64,000 nt of DNA, taken from positions 248,001 to 312,000 of IMG/VR virus record IMGVR_UViG_3300027834_000005. One strand, given 5' to 3'. The first letter of the stretch is position 1. Each line of letters opens with the position of its first letter. Positions 9,224 to 54,961 of the stretch are shown piece by piece. A model generated the notes under the pieces. The model was not told the origin of the DNA and made no database searches. It was given only the letters and a program-made list of their open reading frames with translations. The position numbers and the translations under genes are program-made.

Positions 9224-9382
9224 ATGAGTAATTTTCAAGGTAAAGGCGATTGGCAAAGACCAACGCAAGTAAGTATGGCTGAAAGCGATTTACGCTGGGA
9301 GCTAATGAGTAGCAAGACTACTCAGGAACGTAAAGAAGAAATTTTATTAGTACTTGAATGTATGAAAGAAGAAAAAAAATGA
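9224..9382 (+). CDS. small hypothetical protein, 52 aa (not in ORF track)
   Basis: AAGGA RBS; MSNFQGKGDWQRP...; fills the gap exactly and overlaps the next ATG (ATGA). Confidence 0.65.
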   Translation: MSNFQGKGDWQRPTQVSMAESDLRWELMSSKTTQERKEEILLVLECMKEEKK

Positions 9383-9765
9383 GACTAAATGAATTTATAA
9401 CTGAAGGTAGAGTGGTAGGGTTAGATACGGAATACGTAGACGTCTCTGGTACATCTCTTAAAGGAAAAATTCAAGTACCATATCAAGCATTAGTTAATAT
9501 GTTTGGTGAGCCACAATCCTTCTATGATGATCCTCAATCGGATGTTAATGTCATGTGGGAAGTGGAACTGCAATATCAGGATGACACTACTGAGTACGGT
9601 GAAGGTCATGAATATGATACTGCAGCTACAACGATTTATGATCGTAGATACGATTATGATAAAGATAGGCGCATAGATCCAAATTCTATTACGGAATGGA
9701 ATATTGGTGCCAGATCTAACAACGAAGCTTGGATGCTGGAAAAATACATACGCAGCAATAGCTAA
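9379..9765 (+). CDS. putative internal head protein, phage GTSL.G..FGEP family
   Basis: Starts MRLNEFITE (start moved from 9358); GTSLKG...LVNMFGEP...EW.IGA pattern seen in T4-like hypotheticals. Confidence 0.55.
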   Translation: MRLNEFITEGRVVGLDTEYVDVSGTSLKGKIQVPYQALVNMFGEPQSFYDDPQSDVNVMWEVELQYQDDTTEYGEGHEYDTAATTIYDRRYDYDKDRRIDPNSITEWNIGARSNNEAWMLEKYIRSNS

Positions 9766-9786
9766 AATAAAATAAAGGATATTTTA

Positions 9787-11496
9787 ATGGATATTAATAA
9801 ATTACTAGAGTTAGCTGGCGTTACTCCTAGTGAAAAAACTAAGCTTGATGAGAATTGTGCTGGTGGATTTGCTGGAGTTATGGGTGGACAGGCTCAAGAC
9901 ATAGAAGAGACTGATGCTGAATCCCACACACAAGAAATTGAATACGATGAGACTATGGCTGAAGCTGAATGTCAAACACCGTATGACGATGGTCATGGTC
10001 AATATGGCGATAAATGTTTAGTTGGTGATTCTGCAGAATCAGCAGTTCCTGTGCCAGATCAAGTGTCAGGCGGAGAAGAAATTATAGTTGTTGATCTTGG
10101 AGAGAATGATTTCGAAGACGGCGGCGTAGACGATACTGAGCTAGAACTAGATTTCACTCAGAGTGGCGAGGAGCCAGAGATTTCAATGGTACAAAGTATT
10201 CCTAATGTTGGTGAAGTTCCTACTGACCATACAGTTGATCCATCTATGATGGTCCAAAAAATAGACACTATGCAACAAGGCGGAATGTCTTCAGACGTAG
10301 ATAGTCATGATATTGAAGAATTAATGGGTATGGCTTTAGATAGTATCACTGCTGTATATAATAAAGTTATGGGTAATGAACAGCCAGCTCCTATTGAAGC
10401 TCCTGCTCCAGAACAAGAACCAGCTCCTGTTGCAGCTCCTGCTCCAGAAGAACCAGCTCCTGTTCCGGCACCAGCACAAGGCGTTGAAAATGAGTTAGAT
10501 GAAAATCCATTAGCCGCTGCCGCAGCAGGCGCAGTTGCAGGTAAAGTTGCAGATAAGTTTATGGGTGAAGATGAATTTAGCGATGAATTCGATGATGACT
10601 TTAGTGGTGATGAATTTGGTCAAGAAGACGAACCTGATTTAGGTTATGGCGATGACGAAGTAGAAATGGATGCCGACTTTGGTTCTATGGACCCAACTAA
10701 CGACATGGCACCAGCTAGAACTATGGACCATAACGTTCAAGATAGTTCATCTATGGTTGCTAAGATTATGGCTATGCAAGACAGCGGAATGTCTTCTGCT
10801 AAAGCACAATACAATGCTGACTCATTAGTTAATATGAGTCCTGATATGTTGCTTAGAGTGCATAATAAAGTAATGGGTCAAGGCCTTGAAGAAGAAGATG
10901 ATAACTGGGGCGGAGAGTCTGGATACCAAACTCAACCAGATGATACAGAAGGCCATCTAAGAGGCACTTCACCTTATAATGGCGGAGAAGGTTTCCCTAC
11001 AGGCCAAGCAAGTAACGCAGCATCTCACATCGGTAATACTGGTGGTGATTTCAAAGATAATCCTCTAGGTAATAGCGATCCTGTTACTCAAGTAGAAGAG
11101 TCAACTGATGACATCCACAATAGACTTTCAGAAGCATTTGATTCTTTCTGTGAAGATTATGAATCTATGATTGAAGCTGAGTTAAACGAAATTGGCGGAA
11201 TGCGCATTGCTGGTGGACCTTCATCTATGAGGTCACGTGGTTATGGCCTAGGAAGTAAAAAGTCTGGCGGTAAAGTTGAACGTAGACGTAGTGAAGAGCC
11301 AGTTAAGAAAGAAAGACGTAATAAGCCAGAAGTTGATGAAGCAGGCTGTGAAGCAAGCGTTCAGAAAATGAAAGGTGATATGTCTCCTACTAAAGCTAAT
11401 TTCAGAGCTGCTACTGGTCATGATGACTACGAAGGCATGGAAGAAGGCGGCAATTTCACTAAACGTAATGAAGCGCCTAGAAAACCTAGAGGCTAA
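9787..11496 (+). CDS. large acidic low-complexity putative head/core protein
   Basis: MDINKLLELAGV start; very D/E-rich; Pro-Ala-Glu repeats; duplicated ~45-aa module. Confidence 0.6.
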   Translation: MDINKLLELAGVTPSEKTKLDENCAGGFAGVMGGQAQDIEETDAESHTQEIEYDETMAEAECQTPYDDGHGQYGDKCLVGDSAESAVPVPDQVSGGEEIIVVDLGENDFEDGGVDDTELELDFTQSGEEPEISMVQSIPNVGEVPTDHTVDPSMMVQKIDTMQQGGMSSDVDSHDIEELMGMALDSITAVYNKVMGNEQPAPIEAPAPEQEPAPVAAPAPEEPAPVPAPAQGVENELDENPLAAAAAGAVAGKVADKFMGEDEFSDEFDDDFSGDEFGQEDEPDLGYGDDEVEMDADFGSMDPTNDMAPARTMDHNVQDSSSMVAKIMAMQDSGMSSAKAQYNADSLVNMSPDMLLRVHNKVMGQGLEEEDDNWGGESGYQTQPDDTEGHLRGTSPYNGGEGFPTGQASNAASHIGNTGGDFKDNPLGNSDPVTQVEESTDDIHNRLSEAFDSFCEDYESMIEAELNEIGGMRIAGGPSSMRSRGYGLGSKKSGGKVERRRSEEPVKKERRNKPEVDEAGCEASVQKMKGDMSPTKANFRAATGHDDYEGMEEGGNFTKRNEAPRKPRG

Positions 11497-11536
11497 TTAG
11501 AACACTGGGAAGATTCGCTACCGACCCGTTGTACGT

Positions 11537-11560
11537 GGGGGCTTAACGGCCCCCTTTTTT
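11537..11560 (+). terminator. intrinsic terminator
   Basis: GGGGGC-TTAACG-GCCCCC followed by TTTTTT. Confidence 0.85.
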
Positions 11561-11571
11561 ATGGAGACAGA

Positions 11572-11985
11572 ATGAAGATCACAGAGATACTAAAAGAATA
11601 CGAAAGTCGATATGGCGAAGATGAAGGCCGTACATTAAAAAATCCATTACCGCATATAACTGGTGATGATAGGCTGTTCGGTCATATATTTGATTTGTAC
11701 GATGATACTGTTGGAGAAATAGCAAGTACCCTAGACATAGCAGATAATCCAACTAAATGGAAAAAAGCTACCTCAATGGCAGCTACAACACATACCGTGC
11801 CTATTAAAGATATTGTTGGTACGGAGAAATACCTTGACCCTCGTGGAGCTAAGTCTAGAGATTTACCAGTTCTGGTTTTGTATGAAGGTAAATATTACGT
11901 TCTTGACGGTAACCATAGAGTTTATGCCGCCCACGCAAATGGTGAGAAGGCTATACAAGCATCAGTTATACAGGTAGAAGACTAA
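11572..11985 (+). CDS. ParB/sulfiredoxin-like domain protein with putative capsid-targeting N-terminus
   Basis: LPVLVLYEGKYYVLDGNHRVYAA ParB-N motif; MKITEILKE start; GGAG RBS. Confidence 0.75.
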   Translation: MKITEILKEYESRYGEDEGRTLKNPLPHITGDDRLFGHIFDLYDDTVGEIASTLDIADNPTKWKKATSMAATTHTVPIKDIVGTEKYLDPRGAKSRDLPVLVLYEGKYYVLDGNHRVYAAHANGEKAIQASVIQVED

Positions 11986-12224
11986 TGAGATTATATGAAT
12001 TTATAGAACCAGATATGCTAGGTAAACCTACATTGTCCGCAGAAGAAGTTGCCGGTAAACATGGCGTTCCTTTAGAGGTTATAACGCGTCAGCTGGCCAT
12101 TGGCACACAGGTAGAAAAAGAACATACTGGTGACGAATCCATAGCAATGGAAATAGCTCTTGATCATTTGGCAGAAATGCCAGACTATTATAGTAGATTA
12201 CAGGATATGGAAAATGAAGCTTAA
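11985..12224 (+). CDS. DUF5661-like small protein with putative capsid-targeting N-terminus
   Basis: G..VEKEHT.D...A.EIALDHL.E.PDYY..L pattern; MRLYEFIE start. Confidence 0.65.
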   Translation: MRLYEFIEPDMLGKPTLSAEEVAGKHGVPLEVITRQLAIGTQVEKEHTGDESIAMEIALDHLAEMPDYYSRLQDMENEA

Positions 12225-12254: not shown

Positions 12255-12527
12255 TTAGTCATATTCTGTGACAAGCATAAGGGCTATTCTAATATCGTTA
12301 AAGGACAGCCCTTTAAACCATTCCCCTTTAGTTCTGTATTTTTGTAGACTCCTATGAAGTTCCTTTTCAACTGCGTATGGATTTATTTTCCCTTCAGTAT
12401 ATTCCAATAAAAGCTCTTCGCTATTGCCTGTTTGTAACTGCCTAAGCCTATGCTCAGGGTTCTTAGCAACTCCAATTTTATATGCGTCTCCGCATGAAAT
12501 TATGTATACGAAACCGTTGTTTTCCAT
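12255..12527 (-). CDS. T5orf172/MUG113 (GIY-YIG-like) domain protein
   Basis: FVYII...AYKIGVAKNPEHRLRQLQTGN...EKELH...GEWF; start moved to MENNG. Confidence 0.8.
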   Translation of the reverse strand: MENNGFVYIISCGDAYKIGVAKNPEHRLRQLQTGNSEELLLEYTEGKINPYAVEKELHRSLQKYRTKGEWFKGLSFNDIRIALMLVTEYD

Positions 12528-12547
12528 AGTTATATCCCTAAAACCCC

Positions 12548-12574
12548 TATTTATCAAGGCTTTTGTGATAAATA
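12548..12574. promoter_or_regulatory. divergent pair of late promoter motifs
   Basis: TATTTATC at 12548-12555 (minus strand) and GATAAATA at 12567-12574 (plus strand). Confidence 0.7.
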
Positions 12575-14213: not shown

Positions 14214-15890
14214 GTGATCGATCCGAAACGTGTAAAAGAGCGTGTATTTAAAGCGCTAAAAAGCCAAGGTTACCAAATCAAGATGTACGATGATGGCGGT
14301 ATGGCTACTGTGGATGCTGAGTTAGCATCCAGATTCTACGTTGAAGACCCTAATCTTCTCATCCATGTTGATGAAGAAGACGAAGAGGTCAATTTCAATA
14401 AGAACGGTAACATACCTCTTAGTGATTTTGAGAAAGCAATGTGGGCTGTTAAAGCGGTTGCGAAAGAATACATGTATAAATTCACGATAAGAGAATACGG
14501 TAAGCATATAACACCTAAAGATTTTTCATACCAGACAAAGAAAGGGGATCAAATGGAAAGCGTCCAAGAATCTGCCATGTACGGCACCAAAAAAACCAGC
14601 AGACAGATGATCGAAAATGTTTGTTTGGTAGTCAAGCATAAGAAAGAAGTAGATGAAAGCGTTAGAGGCGCAAGATCTAGAAATATCCAAAGTATCTTTT
14701 TGGAAAGCAACGGGGAAAGATATAAGTTTCCTCACACCAACTTGAACGGTGCTAGAGCAATGGCGCGTCACTTCGCTAACGGCGGATCTAGCCATGACGT
14801 TATTGGCGAGAGTATTGTAAACCTCACTGGAAAAATGTTAGAACTTAGAGAGTTCTACGTTTACTCTAAAAGAAATAAATTAGTAACCGAAGACACCACT
14901 GAAGTGATTGCTGCTCTTAGAGAGAGTATCAATGCTATTGCTGGTGACCTTAAATCAATTTACGGCAAGAAGAGTTACACTAGTGCTACTCAAAGAATTG
15001 CTGAACAAGAAAATTTTATAGCTGAAGACGACGACGGCATTGATTATAGAGATATGTTCACTGTTAAGAAATTCGATGAGAAATTCGAAGCAGTATTGCC
15101 TGTAGTCAGCAGCATTGTACAGGAAAGAAACATGAAATTAAGACGTATTGAAGAATCTTCTCTGGAAAGAGTAAAAGCAACATCTTTTAAGTTTACTGAG
15201 AGTGCTGCTGTTACCTTTGAAAGTAGTACTGTTAAAATGGGACACAGATTGAAAGCTGTGGCACTATCTATCAATGAGAATCCAGAATTAGCCACGTACA
15301 TCGGTTCTATCGGTGGCAAGATGATTTCTGAAGGTGACATTAGTGATTTCGAGAAGTCTGTAGTTAAGAACGTTCTAGAGAACATTACTATGGTATCTGA
15401 AGATGAGCCACAAGATCTTATTTCTGAGTCCGTACGTAAGTTAAGCGAGAAGTTAACAGATATCGAAGATAACGTATACGATAACTTCATTAATGAAGGT
15501 ATGGGTGATGCTATGTCTAGAACTAAACAAGGGGCTAAGTCATTCCAGCGTGAAGCTAATGATGAATTGATGGACCTTGGAACTAGACTTAAAGCTATTC
15601 AGCAGAAAATGAAACAAGGCGAAGGCGTTGAAGAAGGCGTGGAGCGCATGAGTAGCGACGAAGTACATAATTCTACTCTTATGCAATTCAGGCAAGCAGT
15701 GGATCGCTTCGAAGCTGCTAGAAGAGCCATGAAAATTGCTCATAAGCTTAAAGATAAACAGTCTAATGCTAGGCATCAGAAGCAGATCATGATAAACATG
15801 AATAAGCTAAGAGCTGACGTACAGCAACTTGAAAAGAGTTGGGGTATAGGAAGAAATGAAATACCTAACCATCTATTACCTCAAGAGTAA
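14214..15890 (+). CDS. large hypothetical virion/prohead protein
   Basis: 558-aa ORF after terL with late promoter; many xxES sites suggestive of Glu-specific head maturation. Confidence 0.55.
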   Translation: MIDPKRVKERVFKALKSQGYQIKMYDDGGMATVDAELASRFYVEDPNLLIHVDEEDEEVNFNKNGNIPLSDFEKAMWAVKAVAKEYMYKFTIREYGKHITPKDFSYQTKKGDQMESVQESAMYGTKKTSRQMIENVCLVVKHKKEVDESVRGARSRNIQSIFLESNGERYKFPHTNLNGARAMARHFANGGSSHDVIGESIVNLTGKMLELREFYVYSKRNKLVTEDTTEVIAALRESINAIAGDLKSIYGKKSYTSATQRIAEQENFIAEDDDGIDYRDMFTVKKFDEKFEAVLPVVSSIVQERNMKLRRIEESSLERVKATSFKFTESAAVTFESSTVKMGHRLKAVALSINENPELATYIGSIGGKMISEGDISDFEKSVVKNVLENITMVSEDEPQDLISESVRKLSEKLTDIEDNVYDNFINEGMGDAMSRTKQGAKSFQREANDELMDLGTRLKAIQQKMKQGEGVEEGVERMSSDEVHNSTLMQFRQAVDRFEAARRAMKIAHKLKDKQSNARHQKQIMINMNKLRADVQQLEKSWGIGRNEIPNHLLPQE

Positions 15891-24510: not shown

Positions 24511-25074
24511 TTATTTGTGTCTACCGCGATGGCCGCCTGCTGTTCTACTGTAGGTCTTATCGTTCCACCTTTTGTCAGTCTTCATTTTACTGGCTGCTCT
24601 TATGCCAGCATCATCACTAATGTCATTAGCTTTGTTGTTCATGGCACCTTCTATTTTTCTGAATCTTTCTACGCTTAATGAGCCATTCTTTTTCAACTCG
24701 ATAATTGCTTGCTTAGCGTTAAGGTTACCTTTCTTATTATCTAGAATATATTGGTATATTTCTGGATGTCCAGCTTTGAAGTCTTTAATGCTCTCATAAT
24801 CATCTGGATTATAACCCATGGATAGTTTACCCTCTACTTTGTCGGTGTAACCTTTACCATGACAATTGGTGCATATCTTAGTAGGGTTGGTGTCTCCACC
24901 TTGCATAAATTCGTTATTATTTCTCTGTAAAGGTCTGCTGATTCCCTCTTTACCGCTACCCTTACACTGTGGGCAAGTCTGCGCTATAGAGCCATCTGGT
25001 AAATTAATATGGTCTCCGCCTGTTCTGTAGTCAAGGCTAGAACCTTCTCTGTCTACGATTTCTGAAATGATCAT
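24511..25074 (-). CDS. late protein with DnaJ-type CxxCxGxG zinc-finger pair
   Basis: CPQCKGSG and CTNCHGKG; MIISEIV start; own late promoter. Confidence 0.65.
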   Translation of the reverse strand: MIISEIVDREGSSLDYRTGGDHINLPDGSIAQTCPQCKGSGKEGISRPLQRNNNEFMQGGDTNPTKICTNCHGKGYTDKVEGKLSMGYNPDDYESIKDFKAGHPEIYQYILDNKKGNLNAKQAIIELKKNGSLSVERFRKIEGAMNNKANDISDDAGIRAASKMKTDKRWNDKTYSRTAGGHRGRHK

Positions 25075-25097: not shown

Positions 25098-25105
25098 TAT
25101 TTATC
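25098..25105 (-). promoter_or_regulatory. late promoter motif GATAAATA (minus strand)
   Basis: TATTTATC upstream of the 24511..25074 gene. Confidence 0.7.
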
Positions 25106-28060: not shown

Positions 28061-28068
28061 GATAAATA
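28061..28068 (+). promoter_or_regulatory. late promoter motif GATAAATA
   Basis: Exact motif at the start of a virion-type gene block. Confidence 0.7.
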
Positions 28069-28079: not shown

Positions 28080-28496
28080 ATGTATAACCCAAGAGTAACT
28101 AAAGATTTCGACACTTTCAGGATGTTCTTAAAATCGGAAGATATTGTATTATCTGATGACGGCAACTTAAGAAGTACTGAAGGGAAGAATTTTGAAATAT
28201 TAAAGCAAACTATTGGACTGAGGGCAATTCCCGAAAGTGTATCAGCATTAAAGAAAGTTAGATCAGTGAAAGATTTAGGATCTGAAAACTTTAAAGGAAC
28301 TGGGTACGTTTGGGATTTTGCTATTGAAGCAGTCGATATTTTTCTTGGTGATGACGGCAATCCGGTAGGATTATTACAGGATGAACTGAACGATACGGTT
28401 CTACCTTGTGGAAATGTTTTGAAAACGTCTGGTGACGATTTGAATTTGGAATTCTTAAAGGGAGATTTTGATGTTGATAGCGGAGATATTGAGTGA
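28080..28496 (+). CDS. hypothetical late protein
   Basis: ORF after late promoter; start moved to MYNPRV. Confidence 0.55.
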   Translation: MYNPRVTKDFDTFRMFLKSEDIVLSDDGNLRSTEGKNFEILKQTIGLRAIPESVSALKKVRSVKDLGSENFKGTGYVWDFAIEAVDIFLGDDGNPVGLLQDELNDTVLPCGNVLKTSGDDLNLEFLKGDFDVDSGDIE

Positions 28497-28761
28497 AAGT
28501 GAAGACATCGATGAGTCTTTAGTATGGGGTCGTACTGGCACTAAGCTAAAAAAGAAATTCAGATGTACTAGTGGCCTTAGAAAAGGTCGCGTAGTATCCA
28601 GTCCAGAGCAGTGTAGTCTGCCCTTGGACATTGGTAAGAGCGTAAGCCTTAAAAAGACGAAGAAGAAATACGGAAGACGATTAGTTAAAAAAGCTAAGAA
28701 GACAAAACGTATAAATCCAGCGTCTAGAAAGTTGGTTATTATCAATAGGAGAAAGAAGTAA
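28468..28761 (+). CDS. small basic protein with acidic, probably cleavable N-terminus
   Basis: MLIAEILSESEDIDE followed by Lys/Arg-rich FRCTSG.RKGRVV region. Confidence 0.6.
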   Translation: MMLIAEILSESEDIDESLVWGRTGTKLKKKFRCTSGLRKGRVVSSPEQCSLPLDIGKSVSLKKTKKKYGRRLVKKAKKTKRINPASRKLVIINRRKK

Positions 28762-29402: not shown

Positions 29403-29869
29403 ATACACATAATGGATTAATTAAAAAGGAAACTATCGTGGAAACAGTTCAGTTGCTGGAACAAAAGATCAAAACTTATCAGTTAGACCAATTGGAAGAG
29501 AAGATCAAGGACGGTGTTAGCGTTGGCGAATATGTCATTCACTCTACTAGTCTCGGTTACGACATTCATCTTGGTAAGTATAGCGTATGTAAGAATCTAT
29601 ATAGTCTAGATACTGCATTCCTTATCGTCCAAGTTAAGTTAAAATCACCACATAAGAATATTTCCGACATCGTAAAAGCGGACCATGAGTACGGTAAGTA
29701 TAAATACGATACTCTAGTCTACAGTAATACAATTGCCACATCAGATAATATGTGCGCAGTGATGGTTGCTGAAGATAGATTGAACGAAGCAGTTGATAGA
29801 ATGAAGGATGCTAAGAAGATTCTTAGTAAACTAAGAATAGATATCAATGCGCCTATTTTTGATAAATAG
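29399..29869 (+). CDS. hypothetical protein
   Basis: Coupled ORF. Confidence 0.6.
   Translation: MNTHNGLIKKETIVETVQLLEQKIKTYQLDQLEEKIKDGVSVGEYVIHSTSLGYDIHLGKYSVCKNLYSLDTAFLIVQVKLKSPHKNISDIVKADHEYGKYKYDTLVYSNTIATSDNMCAVMVAEDRLNEAVDRMKDAKKILSKLRIDINAPIFDK
29861..29868 (+). promoter_or_regulatory. late promoter motif GATAAATA
   Basis: Exact motif at the gene end, upstream of 29896. Confidence 0.6.
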
Positions 29870-29895: not shown

Positions 29896-30873
29896 ATGTA
29901 CCTTAATCAAATTGAAATACATGATAAAAAGAAGCTATCAAAGCTTAATAACTATCTAAGTGAAAATTTTAAGATTAGAGTAGATGTTGATGGCGACAGC
30001 AAAGAGCTTCTTTCGTTGAGAGAACACGTTATTAACGAAATACACGAGCTAAAGGTTGTGCGCGGTTGTACCCCTAAAGATGCCGATTTAGGCAAAAGCT
30101 TGGCAATGCTTGAGGCAATTGATCTAATTTTGGCAAACCGACGCGCAGTTGTGGAATCTTCTGAGCGATTTGGCCCTTACTCAGGCATCGTAGATAAGAT
30201 GTCAGATGCAGTGGCTAAGTACGTGAATCAGGGCGATGACTTAGATTCAGCCATTTCTGTAGCTATGAGAGAATACCGCTCTAGCAAATACAGATATCCA
30301 GATCACGAAGTAGAACAAGACGTACGTCACAGTGTAGCTTCTAAGCTTATCGGTGGTGTAAATGACGTAGATGAAACTCTAGTCAAAGGTCTTGGAGTAG
30401 AAGTAGATGAAGCCGGTGATTTCTATCATCCAAATACCGATCACGGTTCTTTAGATAGAAAACCTAGAAGATCAGCAGCTCAAGACGTCCCTACTGCATA
30501 TACGCAGAGAGGCCAAAAAGCAGCATTCGGTCCACGTGATAGTGGCAGAGAAACTACCCCAGCAAGATCAAAACTTAACATGAGCGAAGATGGCGGACAG
30601 TATATTTATTTAGCTGACGAACCAAAACTAGCTTTCAATCCCAATACCAGCAAAGGTAACGCTATAGCCATGACAGGCTTTGATAGCGGCGGCGAAGAAA
30701 TTTCCTATCCAGTTAGAGTTAGATTCGTATATGATGACGCTGCTGGTCTCGTTAATATTATTACTATCGTTGATGGTGATGGTAGCGAAACAGGTACTGA
30801 ACTTGATGATGCTGAGAAAGCAACATTAGGACAAAACATTTTAGATGAATTAATGGCAAAGGGCATTTACTAA
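29896..30873 (+). CDS. putative head/core protein
   Basis: 325-aa ORF with AGGA RBS in late block. Confidence 0.55.
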   Translation: MYLNQIEIHDKKKLSKLNNYLSENFKIRVDVDGDSKELLSLREHVINEIHELKVVRGCTPKDADLGKSLAMLEAIDLILANRRAVVESSERFGPYSGIVDKMSDAVAKYVNQGDDLDSAISVAMREYRSSKYRYPDHEVEQDVRHSVASKLIGGVNDVDETLVKGLGVEVDEAGDFYHPNTDHGSLDRKPRRSAAQDVPTAYTQRGQKAAFGPRDSGRETTPARSKLNMSEDGGQYIYLADEPKLAFNPNTSKGNAIAMTGFDSGGEEISYPVRVRFVYDDAAGLVNIITIVDGDGSETGTELDDAEKATLGQNILDELMAKGIY

Positions 30874-31454
30874 TGAATGAGAATAAAAGTTACGTTAAAG
30901 AATTAAGAATAATTCTTGAAGGCGAAGTCGAAGAAGCAGAAGTAATTATGGCTGCTAGAGGTTTCAGTAAAGAACTTCAAGATATGATTCAGAAAGTTGG
31001 TCGTTTGGCCAATGAACAGGTTGGTCCTGTTGTAGATCAAATGCGTTTGACCTATGGCAGTGATATGGCTAACTCTTTCCAAGACACTGTTAAAGGTGAA
31101 ATGGATGCAGTATTACAAACACTAGCACAAGCTAAAGATACTTTAGATGATGTTGTAACAGACATTAGCAATGGTACAGTTCCAGGTGGAGTAGACATGG
31201 ACGAGTTTGGCGGTGATGAGCTAGGCGGAGAAATCGACGCTGAGATTGGTTTTGATGACGATGGTATTGATGGCATTGAAGGCGAAGTCGAAGGCGAATT
31301 CGATATTGATCCTGTTGGTGATGGCGAAGAATCATTTGATGATGAGTTCGGTGCTGAAGAGCCTTTAGGTAGAGCAGCTTTAGAATCTCGTAGATATGCA
31401 GTTGCCAAAAAGATCATGGAAACGGAAGCTAAGCTCAAGTCAAAGAGTAAGTAA
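30873..31454 (+). CDS. acidic scaffold-like protein
   Basis: Helical N-half followed by D/E/G-rich tail ending LGRAALES. Confidence 0.55.
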   Translation: MNENKSYVKELRIILEGEVEEAEVIMAARGFSKELQDMIQKVGRLANEQVGPVVDQMRLTYGSDMANSFQDTVKGEMDAVLQTLAQAKDTLDDVVTDISNGTVPGGVDMDEFGGDELGGEIDAEIGFDDDGIDGIEGEVEGEFDIDPVGDGEESFDDEFGAEEPLGRAALESRRYAVAKKIMETEAKLKSKSK

Positions 31455-31783
31455 TGCGTTTATATCAGATCATTAAAGAAAACGATTCAGCCGACGATAT
31501 TATGTCGGCTTTGTCGTCTATGATTTCCGTGTTGAAATCAAAAGGACATGACAATATCCCTACTCAATATGCTGTACAGTATTTGAATAATATGGGACAA
31601 AATGTTGATGCTGAGTCACTTGCAAGTATTGCTGTTCAGAGTCCCTTTATTACTAGCGCTACTCCAGAAGAGTTGGTTATTGGTAATGAAGCTGAACAAG
31701 ATCTTGGCGCAGGAAATAACGAAATGAATCAGGACGTCGTCGGTCAGATGGCAACTGATACAGCTAAGAGGGATATAGGATGA
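31454..31783 (+). CDS. putative internal head protein
   Basis: MRLYQIIKE start. Confidence 0.55.
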   Translation: MRLYQIIKENDSADDIMSALSSMISVLKSKGHDNIPTQYAVQYLNNMGQNVDAESLASIAVQSPFITSATPEELVIGNEAEQDLGAGNNEMNQDVVGQMATDTAKRDIG

Positions 31784-32670
31784 GTGGTTGTTCTGGAAGT
31801 GGATTTTTGCCAGCTGTCGATGCTAGGTTAAAAGCTAGGAATGATAGAGTTATCTATGCGGAAATTTGCGCTATAGAACAACAAATCTTAGACACTATAA
31901 ATAATTGTACAGGCACGGCACCATTAGAAATTACTATCAATGGCGGAACTCCTATTACGACTCCTAACGGAATTGAATCTATCATGGTTCTTGACGGCGG
32001 ATCTCAATACATAGAAAGTTCCCCTACGGTAGCTATCACGTCAACAGCCGGTACAGGTTTTGCAGCTATTCCTCTAGTAGATTTAACTACTGGTGCGGTT
32101 ATCGGTTTCAATATCAGTGACCGAGGTTCTGATTATGAAGTTGGTGATGTTGTAGACGTAACACATGCCCTAGGCGCTACTGGAATTTTATTCGAAGGTG
32201 TTGTTAGTGCAGTAAGTGATGTTGCGCCTTTCGATGTTTTAGGTATTACTATCACCGTTGGTGGCACAGGTTACTTAGACACTCCATACGTTACTATATT
32301 AGATCCAGAATCAACAGGTTCAGGTTTCATAGGAACAATCGAATTAGACCCAGCAGATAATTCCGTAGTTGAAATTAGCATCCTTAACGGCGGCAGAAAC
32401 TACAGCACAAACTCAACAGCTATCATCGTAGGTGACGTAGGTGTAGGTGGCTCTAATGCTATTATAACCACTACTACACAGTCTTCTATGTATAATGTTA
32501 ATGTAGATCCTTCTCATTATTATGAAGTGTGGGCAGGTCTTGTTGATGATAAAGCTGTGAAGTTACAAATCGATACGATCCAACAGTATTTTATTAGTTT
32601 AGGATACAATTTTATTATCCAAGTTAACCCAGTTACCATGGATACTCTACAGTGGTATATTAGTTGGTAG
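31780..32670 (+). CDS. virion structural protein (baseplate/neck-type Gly-rich beta repeats)
   Basis: Repeated I.V.DGG..Y / GG.GY motifs. Confidence 0.6.
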   Translation: MSGCSGSGFLPAVDARLKARNDRVIYAEICAIEQQILDTINNCTGTAPLEITINGGTPITTPNGIESIMVLDGGSQYIESSPTVAITSTAGTGFAAIPLVDLTTGAVIGFNISDRGSDYEVGDVVDVTHALGATGILFEGVVSAVSDVAPFDVLGITITVGGTGYLDTPYVTILDPESTGSGFIGTIELDPADNSVVEISILNGGRNYSTNSTAIIVGDVGVGGSNAIITTTTQSSMYNVNVDPSHYYEVWAGLVDDKAVKLQIDTIQQYFISLGYNFIIQVNPVTMDTLQWYISW

Positions 32671-32674: not shown

Positions 32675-33556
32675 ATGTTCATCAATAACAAATACACTGA
32701 TACATATCACAGATTAATATACAAATGTTCCTCCTATAATAGGTCTCGTGAAGACGAGGTCTATTATGAGTCCCACCATATAATTCCCAAATCGATGGGA
32801 GGAAGCGATGAAAAAGACAATCTTGTATTTCTCACATCACGTGAACATTACGTAGCGCATTTACTTTTAGTTAAAATGACAGAAGGTGATAACTTCGTAA
32901 GAATGTCCAGAGCGGCACACATGATGATGCATGATAAATATGGCAATAAACTAAAAACCTCCAAGCTTTACGAAGATCTAAAGCATACGTTCATAACAGC
33001 TATTAGCGAAGAAAAGAAAGATAGGACAGTATACGAGTGGACACATGAAGTTTACGGCACGGCGGAATGTTCTATGTGGGATCTCCTAGAAAAATATCCA
33101 GACCATGGAATGACAGTATCTGCTATCAGAAATGTGAAGAATGGCTTCAATAAAACGTGCAAAGGGTGGCGTCTAAAGACGACAATCATTAATGAATATC
33201 ATCACAATACCGACCTTACGGAATATGACTGGTGGAACCAAGAATACGGTGTAGTCACTACGTCAACCCATAAAATGGTGAAAGATTTCAACCTGAACAT
33301 TGATTGTCTGAATTCGGTCAAAAAAGGATGCCAAAAATCTCATAGTGGTTGGTTCCTGTACAATGGCGAAGCACAGTCAGATAAAAGAAGTAAAAAAATA
33401 ATAGACGTAATTAAATGGTATCACGTTGAAAATGGGGATATAGTTTGCACGATAGATGAGTTGTGCGAGTCACACCCACACATAAGCAAAAATCATATAG
33501 CTAGAGTGGCAAAGGGAACTAGAAAATCCCACAAGGGATGGCGGCTAAGCTCATAG
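32675..33556 (+). mobile_element. free-standing HNH homing endonuclease with three C-terminal DNA-binding repeats
   Basis: ESHHIIPKSMGGSDEKDNLVFLTSREHYVAHLLL; three repeats ending KGWRL/SGWFL/KGWRL. Confidence 0.85.
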
Positions 33557-43595: not shown

Positions 43596-44024
43596 ATGGA
43601 AATTTCTAGGACGTTAGAGGAGCAACTCAGTTATTTAGAGATGGCTCTTTTCAATGGAGTATTCAGTGAAGATAAGCTTGCGGATCATTTGCAATGTGTG
43701 ATGCAAGATAAACTGGCAGGGCATGACCCTATGGCATATGATTCAGCTACGTGTAAACAGTTGAACCTAAATAAATATAGCGACCTGACAGATTACAGTA
43801 CCGTTTATCCAGCTAGGCATAGTATTTTTACTGAGATGGCTAATGAGATAACTATTCTGGTTAAACGTAATGAAGTATTAGAAGCCGAAGTAAAAACGTT
43901 ATGCGAAGACCGTACTAGACATGATAATAGATTACGTAATCTTGAAGATAAAGTGAATGTTTTAGTACAAACGCACAACGCTAAAGCAGAACATGAATCT
44001 GCTATACAGACGAGGATTTATTAA
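43596..44024 (+). CDS. hypothetical coiled-coil protein
   Basis: Coupled ORF. Confidence 0.55.
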   Translation: MEISRTLEEQLSYLEMALFNGVFSEDKLADHLQCVMQDKLAGHDPMAYDSATCKQLNLNKYSDLTDYSTVYPARHSIFTEMANEITILVKRNEVLEAEVKTLCEDRTRHDNRLRNLEDKVNVLVQTHNAKAEHESAIQTRIY

Positions 44025-45238
44025 TGAGTGAATTATGTACTTTTTGTGGTAAAGGAAAAGGCGAGGTTGATTTACTTATATCAGGACCGTTAGACTCTGA
44101 AGGTGTACCATCAGCCTACATTTGTAGTGAATGTACTGGTGTCGCTGAAGAGTTCGTATTAGAAATGAAAGCGGATGAGGCTGCACTTGATAAAGTTGAG
44201 TGTACCAAGTCCATTTTGTATCCTAATGATATTAAGAATCAATTAGATGAGTACGTGGTTGGTCAAAATAGCGCTAAAGAAAAGTTATCAGTGGCGATAT
44301 TCAATCATAAGAAAAGAATTGCCATGGTTAATCGTGGTGAGGACACAGTGGAAAAGTCAAATATTCTAATGGTAGGACCATCAGGTAGTGGTAAGACGTT
44401 ATTATTGAAGACTATTACTAAGATTGCTGACGTTCCGTGCATTGTCGCTAACAGCACCTCTCTCACTGAGGCAGGTTATGTAGGGCAAGACGTAGAAAGT
44501 ATCTTTGAGGACCTTCTTATGGCCGCTGACGGCGATATAGATAAGGCACAGCAAGGTATTGTGTTCTTAGATGAGATTGATAAGAAAGCTAAGGCAAAAA
44601 CAGGCGGTAGTGGTAGGGATATCTCAGGCGAAGGCGTACAGCAAGCTTTATTGAAGCTAGTTGAGGGCACAGAGCTTATGATCAACCCTAATCCGAAGAA
44701 TAAGCAACCATTAACGTTGGTTCCATTCAACACTAAGGACATTTTGTTCATAGCTGGTGGTGCATTCGTTGGGTTGGATGATATAGCTAAGAAAAGAGAT
44801 GCTGGCACGACCATGGGTCTATCTGCAACTCTTACTAATAGTGATGAGGCCACAGTGCCTAAGATATCATCTGAAGATTTGAGTAAGTATGGTCTTATAC
44901 GGGAATTCATTGGTAGATTCCCTATCATGGTAACTCTGCAACCACTAAGCGTGGATATGCTGAAAAGAATTATCGTGGAACCTAAGAATAGCATATTCTC
45001 TCAATTTAAAGACTTGTTTGCGGTTGAAGAAATAGAATTGGTATTCACAGAAGAATACCTAGAGTACTTGGCTTCAAAAGCCATAGAGCACAAGACTGGG
45101 GCCAGAGGCCTTAGAAGAAGTCTTGAAGAAGATCTTAGTGGCGTACAGTTCGATCTTAAAAAACATAAAAATGATAATGTCATACGTGTAGTCGTTGGAG
45201 ACAAAGGTATCATTACATTAGAAAAGGAAGATACATGA
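44024..45238 (+). CDS. clpX: ClpX AAA+ unfoldase
   Basis: C4 Zn-binding domain, GPSGSGKT, GYVG pore-1, LDEIDK, RDISGEGVQQALLK, GARGLR. Confidence 0.95.
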   Translation: MSELCTFCGKGKGEVDLLISGPLDSEGVPSAYICSECTGVAEEFVLEMKADEAALDKVECTKSILYPNDIKNQLDEYVVGQNSAKEKLSVAIFNHKKRIAMVNRGEDTVEKSNILMVGPSGSGKTLLLKTITKIADVPCIVANSTSLTEAGYVGQDVESIFEDLLMAADGDIDKAQQGIVFLDEIDKKAKAKTGGSGRDISGEGVQQALLKLVEGTELMINPNPKNKQPLTLVPFNTKDILFIAGGAFVGLDDIAKKRDAGTTMGLSATLTNSDEATVPKISSEDLSKYGLIREFIGRFPIMVTLQPLSVDMLKRIIVEPKNSIFSQFKDLFAVEEIELVFTEEYLEYLASKAIEHKTGARGLRRSLEEDLSGVQFDLKKHKNDNVIRVVVGDKGIITLEKEDT

Positions 45239-45583: not shown

Positions 45584-45889
45584 ATGAGCACACAAACATG
45601 CGAAGACACTATGGTTTTGGAAGAAGTTCAGATTAAGGAACCTTCCACGTATCAAGTAGTTTTCTTGAACGACGATAAAACCCACATTGAATTTGTGGTG
45701 GATGTATTAGCTTCAGTATTTCACAAAACATTAGTGGATGCGGAAATGGTTACCTTACAGATTCATCATACTGGGCGTGGCATTGCCGGTGTATACAGTG
45801 AGGAAATTGCCGAGACTAAGCAAGAAGAGACTACGAAATTGGCTCGCGCCAATGGATTCCCTCTTCAAGTTGTGGTTGAGGAAGTGTAA
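45584..45889 (+). CDS. clpS: ClpS N-degron adaptor
   Basis: P..Y.V..LNDD.T..EFVV.VL, HH.G, AETK, A...GFPL; AGGAG RBS. Confidence 0.93.
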   Translation: MSTQTCEDTMVLEEVQIKEPSTYQVVFLNDDKTHIEFVVDVLASVFHKTLVDAEMVTLQIHHTGRGIAGVYSEEIAETKQEETTKLARANGFPLQVVVEEV

Positions 45890-53107: not shown

Positions 53108-53123
53108 CACTTACTTTATGAAC

Positions 53124-53147
53124 AAAAACCGCCTAGTGCGGTTTTTT
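53124..53147. terminator. bidirectional-type terminator
   Basis: AAAAACCGC-ctagt-GCGGTTTTT. Confidence 0.8.
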
Positions 53148-53163
53148 ACGTGGAGAACAAAGA

Positions 53164-53658
53164 ATGAGATCTATAATCGTACTGTCCACATGGTGGGGCG
53201 GTAAAAAAATAGAAATGAAATGTAAATCGGTAGATATGGTTGGTATTGATGCGGATTACGTAGCCGCAGGATTACAGATTGATGTTGAAAATGATGGAAA
53301 AATGAGACATGGGAAAACTTTCGTACTGAAGGTGAGAAATATCGAAGAGGTAGATGGTGAGAACATAGACGACTTCGAGAATACATTACGAGGCCTGAAA
53401 AAATACGCCATGGTCTTGCATTCATTCAGGTCATATGAGAAAGAAGATTTCATTTGTAAGGAAGTGTATGCCAAAGACGATAGAGATGCTGAAAATCAGA
53501 CGTCGTATTGGTTAATAAATGAGGAATACGATAGCGGATGCTGGGTTGAAATAGAAACCAATGAAACTATAACCAAAAAACCGGAACGTATTCACCAGAC
53601 ATCTAAAAGTTATGTTCCTTGTTGGTGGTGCAAGCTTAAATCCTTTATATTTGGATAA
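53164..53658 (+). CDS. hypothetical protein
   Basis: GGAG RBS. Confidence 0.55.
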   Translation: MRSIIVLSTWWGGKKIEMKCKSVDMVGIDADYVAAGLQIDVENDGKMRHGKTFVLKVRNIEEVDGENIDDFENTLRGLKKYAMVLHSFRSYEKEDFICKEVYAKDDRDAENQTSYWLINEEYDSGCWVEIETNETITKKPERIHQTSKSYVPCWWCKLKSFIFG

Positions 53659-53661
53659 GTC

Positions 53662-53690
53662 TTTACAAAAAAGTCGTGGTGTGGTAAAAT
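53662..53690 (+). promoter_or_regulatory. sigma70-type promoter
   Basis: TTTACA-17-TAAAAT with extended TG. Confidence 0.6.
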
Positions 53691-53724
53691 ACGCACCATA
53701 AAACATACCTAGAGCTTATTTATT

Positions 53725-53889
53725 ATGGAAGAAGACGTTATTGCAGAGTTAGAACGACATAAAAAGTTCATAGCTGGAATGTATGAAATATTATCTGCCG
53801 AAGGATACTTCGGTATAGCTACTCAGTGCGAAGAGCTTACTGAGAGCACAGAAAACTTAATTGAAAGACTAAAAAATGATAAACTTTGA
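53725..53889 (+). CDS. 54-aa small protein (not in ORF track)
   Basis: MEEDVIAELERHKK...; lies between the promoter and the next gene. Confidence 0.5.
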   Translation: MEEDVIAELERHKKFIAGMYEILSAEGYFGIATQCEELTESTENLIERLKNDKL

Positions 53890-54622
53890 TAATGTAACAA
53901 TAGTTAATACCGAAACAACTGGACTTGACTTCAAACAAGACCAAGTCATAGCATTATGCGTAGGATATAAGTCATCCACTGGTAAGTGGGATAATATGAC
54001 ATCTTATTGTAAAGCTGATGTTCCTATTACGCCAGAAATTTCATACCTACATGACATTACTGAAAGTATGTTAGGCGATAAGAGACTTCATGAGTTAGAT
54101 GGCGTTATACCTGACGTGAATGAATACGTTGTAATGTGTAATTCAACTTTTCATGCAGGCATGATTAACGGTAATGGCAGTAAAATGTTATCCGGTAAAA
54201 AATTGATATGCGTTAGTAGAATAAGTAAGAAGCTTGATGCGTTAGGTTTGGGCATGACTAATTATAAATTGCCATACTTGAATCATTTCTTCGGGGCGAA
54301 CATAAAAAGAAATGATTATGAAACCGACACTGCTATGCATAACGCCATCATAGGTAAAGTGTTCGAGAAGCAAGTAGAAATGATGAAGGCTTTAGGGCAG
54401 ATTCATGAATATAATCTTGAAGAGATCTATGAGTGGTTAGAAGCGCCTATTATATATGAAAATATGACGTTTGGTAAACATGTCGGTAAGCCTATGGTAG
54501 AAATACCTATTACTTACTGGACGTGGGCCTTAAGCAACATGGATTCATTGCAGGAAGATGGCGATAAGTACGATTCTGACTTAGCTGCCTCTGTGGCTGC
54601 CGCTTTAGATAAGATTCTATAG
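53876..54622 (+). CDS. DEDDh exonuclease X-like protein with DUF3820-like C-terminus, probably catalytically degenerate
   Basis: NTETTG in place of DTETTG; H.IT..ML; C-terminal MTFGKH.G....EIP..Y..W. Confidence 0.7.
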   Translation: MINFDNVTIVNTETTGLDFKQDQVIALCVGYKSSTGKWDNMTSYCKADVPITPEISYLHDITESMLGDKRLHELDGVIPDVNEYVVMCNSTFHAGMINGNGSKMLSGKKLICVSRISKKLDALGLGMTNYKLPYLNHFFGANIKRNDYETDTAMHNAIIGKVFEKQVEMMKALGQIHEYNLEEIYEWLEAPIIYENMTFGKHVGKPMVEIPITYWTWALSNMDSLQEDGDKYDSDLAASVAAALDKIL

Positions 54623-54961
54623 CGGAGTAGGAACATCTGGGGTATCTTGGACGAAATAGTCAGGGTCGAATCGTTGGTATTTGTCATGTGGCATACCAGC
54701 ATTAGCTTTAGCCTCTTCTCTTCCTCGATATCCAGCAGATTGCATATCACCTACGACTGGAGTAGAGGTCCAATCCTCTTCTTCGTTATCAACATCATCC
54801 GTGACTACGGGCGTGCCCCCTTTATTATCTTTGGCTTTCTTTTTAGCCTTAGATTCCTCTTCTTCTTTATAAGAAGATGATTCAGGGTTCAACTCAGCAT
54901 CCAATTCATTGGTGGCTGAAAAGTATTTGTCGTTTGTCTCGAAAAGTTCTATAAGTCTCAT
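54617..54961 (-). CDS. acidic putative internal head protein (solitary minus-strand late gene)
   Basis: MRLIELFE start 5 nt after GATAAATA (start moved from 55168). Confidence 0.65.
   Translation of the reverse strand: MRLIELFETNDKYFSATNELDAELNPESSSYKEEEESKAKKKAKDNKGGTPVVTDDVDNEEEDWTSTPVVGDMQSAGYRGREEAKANAGMPHDKYQRFDPDYFVQDTPDVPTPL

What the first reader, a model, noticed from the sequence alone, without database searches (positions are those of the whole stretch)
9379..54961. Unrelated cargo proteins share an N-terminal M-[RK]-[LI]-x-E-[FIL] putative capsid-targeting signal
N-termini seen are MRLNEFITE (9379), MKITEILKE (11572), MRLYEFIE (11985), MIISEIV (25074, minus), MLIAEILSE (28471), MRLYQIIKE (31454) and MRLIELFE (54961, minus). 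The bodies behind the tag are unrelated: ParB/Srx, DUF5661-like, DnaJ-type zinc finger, a basic peptide and acidic disordered proteins. T4 internal proteins use a 10-aa signal (MKTYQEFIAE) that is removed after Glu by gp21. The two tagged minus-strand genes lie outside the virion operons yet each has its own GATAAATA promoter, which is independent support for late expression. Inference: a modular protein-packaging and injection system that recruits new effectors by adding a short tag.
Basis: partly seen in the sequence, partly recalled or inferred. Interest (0 to 1): 0.78.

Follow-up and report, generated by a model that had tools for sequence, protein, structure and literature searches.

The report
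Head-targeting tag on jumbo-phage proteins
Seven otherwise unrelated small proteins of an uncultured 347-kb T4-related jumbo phage begin with the same ~9-residue tag, which most likely works like phage T4's capsid targeting sequence, loading them into the phage head; this could allow packaged (possibly injected) proteins to be predicted from sequence alone.

Summary
All seven N-termini are at the stated coordinates. A loose form of the motif hits exactly those seven among 809 ATG-started ORFs in the window. The bodies behind the tag are unrelated.

The window is part of a 347-kb metagenomic jumbo phage distantly related to Pseudomonas phage PA5oct. Its own genome has a T4-type head module: portal, a small gp67-position protein beginning MKKSDIINE, an S77 (gp21-family) prohead protease, a scaffold-position gene and the major capsid protein.

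A scoring matrix trained only on the seven window tags gives three independent results:
- In PA5oct its top hit is the post-portal protein gp333, which was detected in virions.
- In 12 distinct relatives it picks out the first gene after the portal.
- It finds tagged ADP-ribosyltransferases, like T4 Alt, inside another relative's head module.

Two body families occur both with and without the ~10-residue tag. The consensus is M-[KR]-[LI]-x-[ED]-φ-φ-x-E, which contains the gp21 cleavage motif L/I-x-E and resembles T4 Alt (MELITELFDE) and IPIII (MKTYQEFIAE). Tagged genes sit in late operons or behind their own GATAAATA late-promoter box.

Verdict: a T4-type capsid targeting sequence in a new, large phage clade. 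The concept is known; this clade is not described. Encapsidation, cleavage and injection are untested.

The parts
9379..9765 (+). Tagged gene (128 aa, acidic), N-terminus MRLNEFITE. The body belongs to a family of 65 representatives, some tagged and some not.
   Evidence: The ATGA overlap with the upstream ORF fits translational coupling (inferred).
11572..11985 (+). Tagged gene (137 aa), N-terminus MKITEILKE. The C-terminus has a DGNHR motif; a ParB/Srx assignment is unconfirmed.
   Evidence: A terminator-like hairpin lies just upstream.
11985..12224 (+). Tagged gene (79 aa), N-terminus MRLYEFIE, followed by a linker and a complete DUF5661 domain (residues 19-78).
   Evidence: Pfam E 1.7e-18; 8 of 12 homologues carry the tag and 4 do not.
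24511..25074 (-). Tagged gene (187 aa, basic), N-terminus MIISEIVDRE, with two CxxCxGxG zinc-finger motifs. It has no homologues. This is the weakest member of the tag set.
   Evidence: MNIFEIVDRE starts another protein of the same genome.
25098..25105 (-). GATAAATA late-promoter-like box, 23 nt upstream of the 25074 start codon.
28061..28068 (+). GATAAATA box heading the operon that contains the 28471 gene.
28471..28761 (+). Tagged gene (96 aa), N-terminus MLIAEILSE, then an acidic linker and a very basic body (pI 10.8, 30% K+R). It resembles a T4 internal protein.
   Evidence: Its neighbours are orthologues of the PA5oct virion proteins gp250 and gp249.
29861..29868 (+). GATAAATA box heading the operon 29896-32670, which contains the 31454 gene.
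31454..31783 (+). Tagged gene (109 aa, acidic), N-terminus MRLYQIIKE. It is the orthologue of PA5oct gp246, which begins (M)KIKDILVE and was detected in virions.
54617..54961 (-). Tagged gene (114 aa, acidic), N-terminus MRLIELFE. It is the orthologue of PA5oct gp213 (MKIKEIILE at an internal start), which was not detected in virions.
54967..54974 (-). GATAAATA box exactly 5 nt upstream of the 54961 ATG. This predicts a leaderless late mRNA. The same geometry occurs at PA5oct gp213.
8024..8031 (+). GATAAATA box heading the virion-gene run 8060-11496, which contains the 9379 gene.

Best explanation
The shared N-terminus is a prohead-core (capsid) targeting propeptide of the T4 type. Its consensus is M-[KR]-[LI]-x-[ED]-[IFL]-[LIFY]-x(0-1)-E.

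Proposed mechanism (every step below is inferred):
1. Tagged proteins are made late in infection.
2. The tag makes them co-assemble with the scaffolding core that forms on the portal. The tag mimics the N-terminus of the small core protein encoded just after the portal gene, in the T4 gp67 position.
3. Once the shell has closed, the phage's S77 (gp21-family) prohead protease removes the tag after a Glu of an [LI]-x-E motif. The most likely site is the Glu at position 8-9.
4. The mature cargo stays in the head with the DNA and, as with T4 IPs and Alt, probably enters the next host cell.

Because the tag is short and lies outside the folded domain, unrelated genes can be recruited simply by acquiring it.

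Shown here: the motif, its enrichment, its link to head modules and to virion-detected orthologues, its modular presence or absence, the presence of the protease, and late-promoter-like boxes.
Not shown: binding to the core, cleavage, retention in the virion, and injection.
For: 1. Specificity. The loose motif hits exactly 7 of 809 ORF starts in the window, against 6 of 9,940 in related DNA. Leave-one-out ranks are 1, 1, 1, 1, 2, 7 and 15 among 802.

2. Machinery in the same genome. About 89 kb upstream of the window lie a Portal_T4 gene, a 78-aa post-portal protein beginning MKKSDIINE, a Peptidase_S77 gene (E 6e-28), a scaffold-position gene and a Gp23-family capsid gene.

3. A matrix trained only on the seven tags gives:
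- in PA5oct, the top hit of 4,215 starts is gp333, the protein directly after the portal, which was detected in virions; the second hit is gp213, the orthologue of the 54961 protein;
- in 82 head-module loci, 12 of the 21 distinct hits are the first gene after the portal (OR 8.2, p = 5e-6).

4. Virion detection. Seven of the 14 top-scoring annotated PA5oct starts are MS-positive (gp333, gp254, gp246, gp135, gp279, gp105, gp104), against a background of 93/461 (p = 0.012). The 31454 protein is the orthologue of MS-positive gp246.

5. Effector-type cargo. Locus L123 has five consecutive tagged genes after its portal. Two are ART-PolyVal ADP-ribosyltransferases (E 3e-18 and 5e-24), paralleling T4 Alt.

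6. Modularity.
- In the 9379 body family, 21 of 60 representatives are tagged. They are about 11 aa longer, and the conserved GTS motif sits about 10 residues later.
- In the DUF5661 family, 8 of 12 homologues are tagged.
- The DUF5661, KTSC and ART domains all begin after the tag plus a linker.

7. Likeness to T4.
- IPII/IPIII begin MKTYQEFIAE and Alt begins MELITELFDE.
- gp21 cuts after L/I-x-E, and Alt is processed at ITE-6.
- Six of the seven tags have [LI]-x-E at residues 3-5, and five of the seven have a second [LI]-x-E ending at residue 8-9.

8. Late expression. GATAAATA boxes lie 12-35 nt upstream of the sheath, tube, TerL and other virion genes. All five stand-alone tagged genes found in this genome have their own box. 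ATAAATA is the predicted late promoter in the related phage CBB.
Against: - There is no direct evidence from this phage. It is a metagenomic contig with no virion proteome, so encapsidation, cleavage and injection are all inferred.
- PA5oct gp213, the orthologue of the 54961 protein, and half of the top-scoring PA5oct starts were not detected in virions.
- The tag was almost absent from 1 Mb of TerL-flanking DNA of relatives.
- In the Rak2-like phage CBB the post-portal protein begins MLDEIFE, a shifted register. The exact consensus is therefore clade-specific.
- The post-portal protein of this genome scores only 4.6 bits on the matrix (K at position 3, D at position 5).
- 25074 is a weak member (leave-one-out rank 15) and has no homologues.
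- The 11985 tag would leave Pro at P1' if cut after Glu 8, which may not be cleavable (inference).
- Likeness to the T4 CTS over 8-10 residues cannot prove homology.
Confidence: 0.7

Rival explanations
1. The tag does direct proteins into the prohead core, but the tagged proteins are disposable core or scaffold accessories. Like T4 gp67 and gp68, they would be chopped up and expelled during maturation rather than delivered to the next cell as effectors.
For: The best-conserved tag bearer is the gp67-position protein itself. Several window cargos are acidic and low in complexity, like scaffold proteins (31454, 54961). In T4, gp67 and gp68 are cut into fragments that leave the head.
Against: PA5oct orthologues and analogues (gp246, gp254, gp135, gp279, gp333) were detected in mature virions. 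Some bodies are folded enzyme-like or DNA-binding-like domains: ART-PolyVal, DUF5661, KTSC, a zinc finger, and a highly basic IP-like protein. These are not typical of scaffolds.
Confidence: 0.15
2. The N-terminus is a recognition signal for something other than the head. One candidate is a degron or adaptor tag read by the phage-encoded ClpX/ClpS/ClpP system. Another is a shared docking helix for a chaperone.
For: The window encodes ClpX (zf-C4_ClpX plus AAA_2), ClpS (E 1e-27) and ClpP (E 2e-57). PA5oct is annotated with ClpX, ClpS, ClpA and a protease (gp212) at the position of the window's ClpP. From general knowledge, N-terminal ClpX recognition motifs exist in E. coli.
Against: This idea does not explain several findings: the tag marks the first gene after the portal in many relatives, tag bearers are enriched among virion-detected proteins, tagged genes carry late-promoter boxes, and the tag contains the S77/gp21 cleavage motif. 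No test here links the tag to Clp.
Confidence: 0.08
3. The resemblance is chance, a general N-terminal composition bias (MK/MR starts in an AT-rich genome), or a nucleotide-level translation-initiation feature.
For: The motif is short. The loose pattern was fitted after the fact. Three of the seven tags miss the strict pattern.
Against: The motif is absent from about 800 other ORF starts in the window, and the background is 0.06%. Leave-one-out ranks are high. Codons differ while the residues are conserved. The tag is conserved in distant orthologues. A matrix trained on the window finds head-module genes elsewhere.
Confidence: 0.03

Closest known systems
Phage T4 capsid targeting sequence (CTS) of internal proteins IPI, IPII and IPIII (Mullaney & Black 1996, as reviewed in PMC9026906 and PMC3012670)
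   Same: Both are ~10-residue tags at the extreme N-terminus of otherwise unrelated small proteins. Both are hydrophobic and acidic and end in an L/I-x-E site for a gp21/S77 prohead protease. Both sit in a T4-type head module (portal, small core protein, protease, scaffold, capsid protein). Cargo includes a very basic IP-like protein. Genes are expressed late and scattered around the genome.
   Different: The consensus differs: M-[KR]-[LI]-x-E-φ-φ-x-E against MKTYQEFIAE. There are many more tagged genes, at least 12 in the 165 kb read, against four in T4 (IPI-III and Alt). The tag is shared with the gp67-position protein. Several tagged genes have a promoter box 5 nt from the ATG, which predicts leaderless mRNAs. 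Targeting and cleavage are experimentally shown in T4 and untested here.
T4 Alt, a packaged and injected ADP-ribosyltransferase (N-terminus MELITELFDE, processed at ITE-6)
   Same: The Alt N-terminus is the closest sequence match to the window tags (compare MRLIELFE and MKITEILKE). Relative L123 carries tagged ART-PolyVal ADP-ribosyltransferases inside its head module.
   Different: No ART domain was found among the seven window proteins. The L123 enzymes belong to the ART-PolyVal family; I did not scan T4 Alt against Pfam, so a shared family was not tested.
T4 gp67/gp68 prohead core proteins
   Same: A small gene immediately after the portal gene and before the protease. In this clade it is the most consistent bearer of the tag.
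   Different: T4 gp67 begins MEGLIEAIKS, which scores poorly on the matrix, and no sequence homology was established.
Long N-terminal propeptides of ejection proteins in phiKZ/SPN3US-type giant phages
   Same: Propeptides removed by a diverged gp21-like protease after Glu are thought to target proteins into the head.
   Different: Those propeptides are 80-130 residues long and are cut at S/A/G-x-E or A-x-E. Here the tag is ~9 residues with L/I-x-E, as in T4.

Membership tests
T4-type capsid targeting sequence (CTS) system | A short (~10 aa) signal at the extreme N-terminus of the cargo | tested here: met
   All seven tags start at Met1. The conserved part spans residues 1-9. The DUF5661, KTSC and ART domains start after the tag plus a linker.
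T4-type capsid targeting sequence (CTS) system | The signal contains or ends in the prohead-protease site L/I-x-E | tested here: met
   [LI]-x-E occupies residues 3-5 in six of seven tags. A second [LI]-x-E ends at residue 8-9 in five of seven tags.
T4-type capsid targeting sequence (CTS) system | The same genome encodes a gp21-family (Peptidase_S77) prohead protease within a T4-type head module | tested here: met
   L226: Portal_T4, Peptidase_S77 (E 6.4e-28) and a Gp23-family capsid gene, on the same 347-kb contig as the window.
T4-type capsid targeting sequence (CTS) system | The same signal is carried by otherwise unrelated proteins | tested here: met
   No pairwise BLAST similarity between bodies beyond residue 12. 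Tagged and untagged members occur in two body families.
T4-type capsid targeting sequence (CTS) system | Late expression, together with the head genes | tested here: inconclusive
   GATAAATA boxes lie upstream of virion genes and of all stand-alone tagged genes. No transcript data exist for this phage. 11572 and 11985 follow a terminator-like hairpin and have no box of their own.
T4-type capsid targeting sequence (CTS) system | Tagged proteins are present in the virion | tested here: inconclusive
   Tested only through PA5oct. gp246 (orthologue of the 31454 protein), gp333, gp254, gp135, gp279, gp104 and gp105 are MS-positive. gp213 (orthologue of the 54961 protein) is MS-negative.
T4-type capsid targeting sequence (CTS) system | The tag is necessary and sufficient for encapsidation, and is removed by the protease | not testable with these tools
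   This needs reporter fusions and N-terminal mass spectrometry.
T4-type capsid targeting sequence (CTS) system | Sequence homology to the T4 CTS itself | tested here: inconclusive
   The patterns look alike (MELITELFDE and MKTYQEFIAE against MRLIELFE and MRLYEFIE), but T4 tags score negative on the window matrix because their register is shifted. The segment is too short to establish homology.
ClpX/ClpS N-terminal degron | A tag read by the Clp unfoldase or adaptor, leading to degradation | not testable with these tools
   Only the phage ClpX, ClpS and ClpP genes are shown to be present. No link to the tag was found.

The most novel reading that the evidence does not exclude
The tag may be a clade-wide, sequence-readable address label. 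In the large uncultured PA5oct-like jumbo-phage clade (at least 590 capsid-gene loci in IMG/VR), any protein starting M-[KR]-[LI]-x-[ED]-φ-φ-x-E would be packaged into the head and injected with the DNA. Scanning genomes for the tag would then reveal an untapped repertoire of first-strike host-takeover and anti-defence proteins. Candidates include ADP-ribosyltransferases, ParB/Srx-like proteins, DUF5661, KTSC and zinc-finger proteins. Many of these genes would be transcribed as leaderless late mRNAs from a promoter box placed exactly 5 nt before the ATG.
Probability: 0.35. Interest if true: 0.75.

Novelty: new member of a known kind. Interest (0 to 1): 0.6.

Why it matters
Proteins packaged in a phage head and injected with the DNA are the first phage products to meet host defences. 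In T4, IPI* blocks the GmrSD restriction enzyme and Alt modifies the host RNA polymerase.

For jumbo phages outside the phiKZ group, almost nothing is known about which proteins are packaged. A short, recognisable tag would help in three ways:
- Packaged proteins could be predicted directly from genomes and metagenomes.
- It would give a handle for loading foreign proteins into jumbo-phage heads, as has been done with the T4 CTS.
- It would show that the T4 targeting-and-processing logic is older and more widespread than the T-even phages.

It also gives a testable hypothesis for a cultured model, PA5oct, whose published virion proteome already contains several tag bearers.

Tried and rejected
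- The strict and loose regexes gave only 6 hits in 1 Mb of TerL-flanking loci of relatives. The tag is therefore not generally enriched near TerL in relatives. The head-module loci were the informative ones.
- Two related-loci scans, with the PA5oct portal and with a capsid-protein alignment, did not return the window's own contig.
- I instead walked along the contig with the look-up of encoding contigs and reached its head module about 89 kb upstream of the window. One downstream step showed only tail genes.
- The protein encoded after TerL (14214-15890) is the orthologue of PA5oct gp278, not of the tagged gp279. 28471 is not homologous to PA5oct gp259.
- Word-indexed homologue searches for the 25074 and 11572 proteins found only the proteins themselves.
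- Pfam and PHROGs gave nothing for 9379, 28471, 31454 or 54961, and no ParB/Srx hit for 11572 or its look-alike outside the window.
- The PA5oct supplementary tables (peptide coverage, promoters) are not held, so N-terminal peptide coverage could not be checked.
- I considered a nucleotide-level cause (a shared 5' cassette) and rejected it because codons and upstream DNA differ.
- Cleavage at Glu 5 would expose an N-degron (Phe or Leu) for the phage ClpS. I considered this but do not favour it, because in the wider tag set the Glu at position 8-9 is the more plausible cut site.
- The Rak2-like phage CBB has a register-shifted variant (MLDEIFE). The exact consensus is therefore clade-specific.

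Full report
**What the window is.** The 64-kb window is part of IMGVR_UViG_3300027834_000005, a 347-kb metagenomic phage contig. The same genome was also assembled in an ENA and a JGI sample. Its large terminase is 59% identical to that of Pseudomonas jumbo phage PA5oct (Arenbergviridae) and 43-49% identical to Atu_ph07 and the Rak2-like phages. No phage record matches at the DNA level. Gene order follows PA5oct: tail sheath, tube, neck and virion genes, TerL, gp32-like SSB, UvsX, helicases, a block of small virion proteins, ribonucleotide reductase, ClpX/ClpS, a DNA polymerase exonuclease subunit and ClpP.

**The observation.**
- All seven N-termini are present as written.
- Only four fit the strict M-[RK]-[LI]-x-E-[FIL].
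- The looser M.[LIV].[EQ][FILV][FILV].{0,2}E hits exactly these seven among 809 ATG-started ORFs of at least 40 codons in all six frames, and every hit is a plausible gene start.
- The same pattern hits 6 of 9,940 such ORFs in 1 Mb of related phage DNA.
- In leave-one-out scoring, four tags rank first among 802 other candidates. The others rank 2nd, 7th (54961) and 15th (25074).
- Codons and upstream DNA differ, so the likeness is at the protein level.
- The bodies share no detectable similarity.
- A matrix scan including GTG and TTG starts found no further member in the window; the next-best score was 7.8, against 13.5-19.8 for the seven.

**The same genome has T4-type head machinery.** Walking along the contig, I reached its head module about 89 kb upstream of the window. 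The module contains:
- a Portal_T4 gene;
- a 78-aa gene beginning MKKSDIINENYD;
- a 290-aa gene;
- Peptidase_S77, the T4 gp21 family (E 6e-28);
- a 361-aa scaffold-position gene;
- a Gp23-family capsid gene.

This is the T4 order 20-67-68-21-22-23. PA5oct has the same order, and its gp331 is also S77.

In the 165 kb of this genome that I could read, five more genes carry the tag or a close variant:
- the post-portal gene (MKKSDIINE);
- MRFKDLFE (233 aa);
- MRLLEFNN (112 aa, with a DGYHR motif);
- MRLLEFNTT (118 aa);
- MNIFEIVDRE (116 aa, KTSC domain).

**Independent tests with a matrix trained only on the seven window tags.**
- PA5oct. Among 4,215 candidate starts the top hit is gp333 (MKINDIITE). 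This is the 73-aa protein directly after the portal, and it was detected in virions. The second hit is gp213 (MKIKEIILE), the syntenic orthologue of the 54961 protein (E 2e-13).
- PA5oct virion proteome. Of the 14 top-scoring annotated starts, 7 are flagged ESI-MS/MS in the record (gp333, gp254, gp246, gp135, gp279, gp105, gp104). The paper reports 93 virion-associated proteins among 461 coding regions, giving a binomial p of 0.012.
- Head-module loci. In 82 loci from IMG/VR, 12 of the 21 distinct hits scoring at least 7 bits are the first gene after the portal (33-165 nt downstream). The odds ratio is 8.2 and the Fisher p is 5e-6.
- Locus L123. Five consecutive tagged genes lie after its portal (MKIKELL, MRINEIV, MRINEII, MRINEII, MVLNELF). 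Two are ART-PolyVal ADP-ribosyltransferases. This is the same kind of enzyme T4 packages as Alt.

**Orthologues and modularity.**
- The 31454 protein is the orthologue of PA5oct gp246, which begins (M)KIKDILVE and was detected in virions.
- DUF5661 family (the 11985 protein): 8 of 12 relatives begin MRLYEF, MRLDEI, MNINEI or MRFSEI. Four lack the tag or have a different N-terminal extension. The Pfam domain starts only at residue 19.
- The 9379 body: an exhaustive HMMER search found 65 representatives. Of the 60 with at most 200 aa, 21 start with the tag (for example MRLTEILKE, MRFKEIINE, MKLRQILNE) and 39 do not. Tagged members are about 11 residues longer, and the conserved GTS motif lies about 10 residues further in.
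- One distant tagged member sits right after the gp13 neck gene in another PA5oct-like contig.

The tag is therefore an add-on in front of pre-existing domains.

**Consensus and likeness to T4.** Fifty-seven tags independent of the window seven give M-[KR]-[LI]-[NK/x]-[ED]-[IFL]-[LIFY]-x-E. The T4 sequences were read from NC_000866:
- IPII and IPIII begin MKTYQEFIAE.
- IPI begins MKTFKEFTST.
- Alt begins MELITELFDE.

According to the literature:
- The first 10 residues of IPIII suffice for targeting.
- Residues 4 and 7 matter for targeting, and residues 8 and 10 for processing.
- gp21 cuts after L/I-x-E, and Alt is cut at ITE-6.

The window tags contain [LI]-x-E at residues 3-5 in six of seven cases. 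Five of the seven have a second [LI]-x-E ending at residue 8-9. In the larger set the second Glu, followed by N, S or G, is the more plausible cut site (inference).

**Late expression.**
- GATAAATA occurs 15 times in the window. About 5-6 are expected from base composition, scaled from the figures.
- Ten copies lie 12-35 nt upstream of start codons, including those of the sheath, tube, 8060, TerL, 14214, 28080 and 29896 genes.
- CATAAATA precedes the 34345 gene.
- The T4 late box is TATAAATA at -13 to -6. ATAAATA is the predicted late promoter in the related phage CBB.
- 9379, 28471 and 31454 lie in such operons. 25074 has its own box 23 nt upstream, and 54961 has one 5 nt upstream.
- 11572 and 11985 follow a terminator-like hairpin and have no box of their own. 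This is a gap in the argument.
- All five stand-alone tagged genes found in the 165 kb have a box.

**A side observation.** In three tagged genes (54961 and two outside the window), and in PA5oct gp213, the box lies exactly 5 nt before the ATG. By the T4 geometry, +1 would then be the A of the ATG, so these mRNAs are predicted to be leaderless. The same spacing occurs at window 23480(-) and 23546(+, CATAAATA).

**Interpretation.** The best-supported explanation is a T4-type capsid targeting propeptide. It would be shared with the gp67-position core protein and removed by the S77 protease, and it would load a varied set of small proteins into the head. The set includes a very basic IP-like protein (28471, pI 10.8), DUF5661, a zinc-finger protein, ParB/Srx-like candidates and acidic proteins.

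Delivery into the next host is inferred by analogy with T4 IPs and Alt and from the ART cargo in L123. Encapsidation, cleavage and injection remain untested.

Rivals:
- Tagged proteins are disposable core components rather than effectors. This is plausible for the acidic ones.
- The tag is read by the phage Clp system. I found no supporting link.
- Chance or a translation-level feature. This is strongly disfavoured.

**Novelty.** The CTS concept and its role in recruiting diverse internal proteins are established for T4 and the T-even phages. Full-text searches found no description of such a tag in PA5oct, the Rak2-like phages or other non-phiKZ jumbo phages. The PA5oct paper mentions neither a CTS nor GATAAATA promoters. 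I therefore rate this a new member of a known kind. It has practical value as a sequence-based predictor of packaged proteins in a very large uncultured clade (at least 590 capsid-gene loci in IMG/VR).

Noticed in passing
window 54967-54974(-) before the ATG at 54961; window 23480(-) and 23546(+); outside the window L222:9493-9831(-) and L214:2841-3191; PA5oct gp213 (L079 about 30252): A late-promoter box ([GC]ATAAATA) lies exactly 5 nt before the start codon. With the T4 geometry (box at -13 to -6), transcription would start at the A of the ATG, giving leaderless late mRNAs. The spacing is conserved between this phage and PA5oct and is found at three tagged genes.
   Followed up: partly
window 8721-9215 and 9787-11496; PA5oct gp281 (L001:18431-19927): A second shared N-terminus occurs on two neighbouring virion genes: MDLQRLLLLSGQ and MDINKLLELAGV. 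PA5oct gp281, which was detected in virions, begins MFNINDILRLAGV. One DUF5661 homologue (P0005) ends in ...INDILRLAGIL. This may be another assembly or processing signal.
   Followed up: no
window 44024-45238, 45584-45889, 55592-56236: The phage encodes its own ClpX (with zinc finger), ClpS adaptor and ClpP protease. The PA5oct protein at the ClpP position (gp212) is annotated 'head maturation protease', although the true prohead protease there is the S77 enzyme gp331.
   Followed up: partly
window 3889-4512: A Rhomboid-family (PF01694) membrane protease gene sits between the tail sheath and tail tube genes.
   Followed up: no
window 12255-12527(-) and 12541-12574: A T5orf172/MUG113-type (GIY-YIG-like) gene lies on the minus strand just upstream of TerL. 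Two GATAAATA boxes sit back to back, one facing this gene and one facing TerL.
   Followed up: no
L218:10810-12528 (same genome, about 17 kb upstream of the window): A 114-aa ORF resembles the N-terminal part of the Gp23-type capsid protein. Next to it lie a papain-like Peptidase_C1 gene and a tagged 118-aa gene (MRLLEFNTT) with its own GATAAATA box.
   Followed up: no
L123:12908-16974 (IMGVR_UViG_3300050034_000187): Five consecutive tagged genes lie between the portal and the rest of the head module. Two are ART-PolyVal ADP-ribosyltransferases. This resembles an expanded T4 internal-protein/Alt locus.
   Followed up: partly
PA5oct NC_071039: gp213 (179881-180267, minus strand) and gp246 (157529-157843): The annotated start of gp213 is probably 5 codons too far upstream. 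The conserved tag, and a GATAAATA box 5 nt before it, mark the ATG at 180252. gp246 is annotated with a GTG start that yields the tag (M)KIKDILVE.
   Followed up: partly
window 11500-11571: A terminator-like hairpin (GGGGGC...GCCCCC followed by a T run) separates the 9787-11496 virion gene from the tagged genes 11572 and 11985. These two genes have no late-promoter box of their own, so how they are transcribed is unclear.
   Followed up: no
window 32675-33556: A homing (HNH-type) endonuclease gene is inserted between virion genes and the exonuclease gene. PA5oct has different homing endonucleases at other sites in the syntenic region.
   Followed up: no
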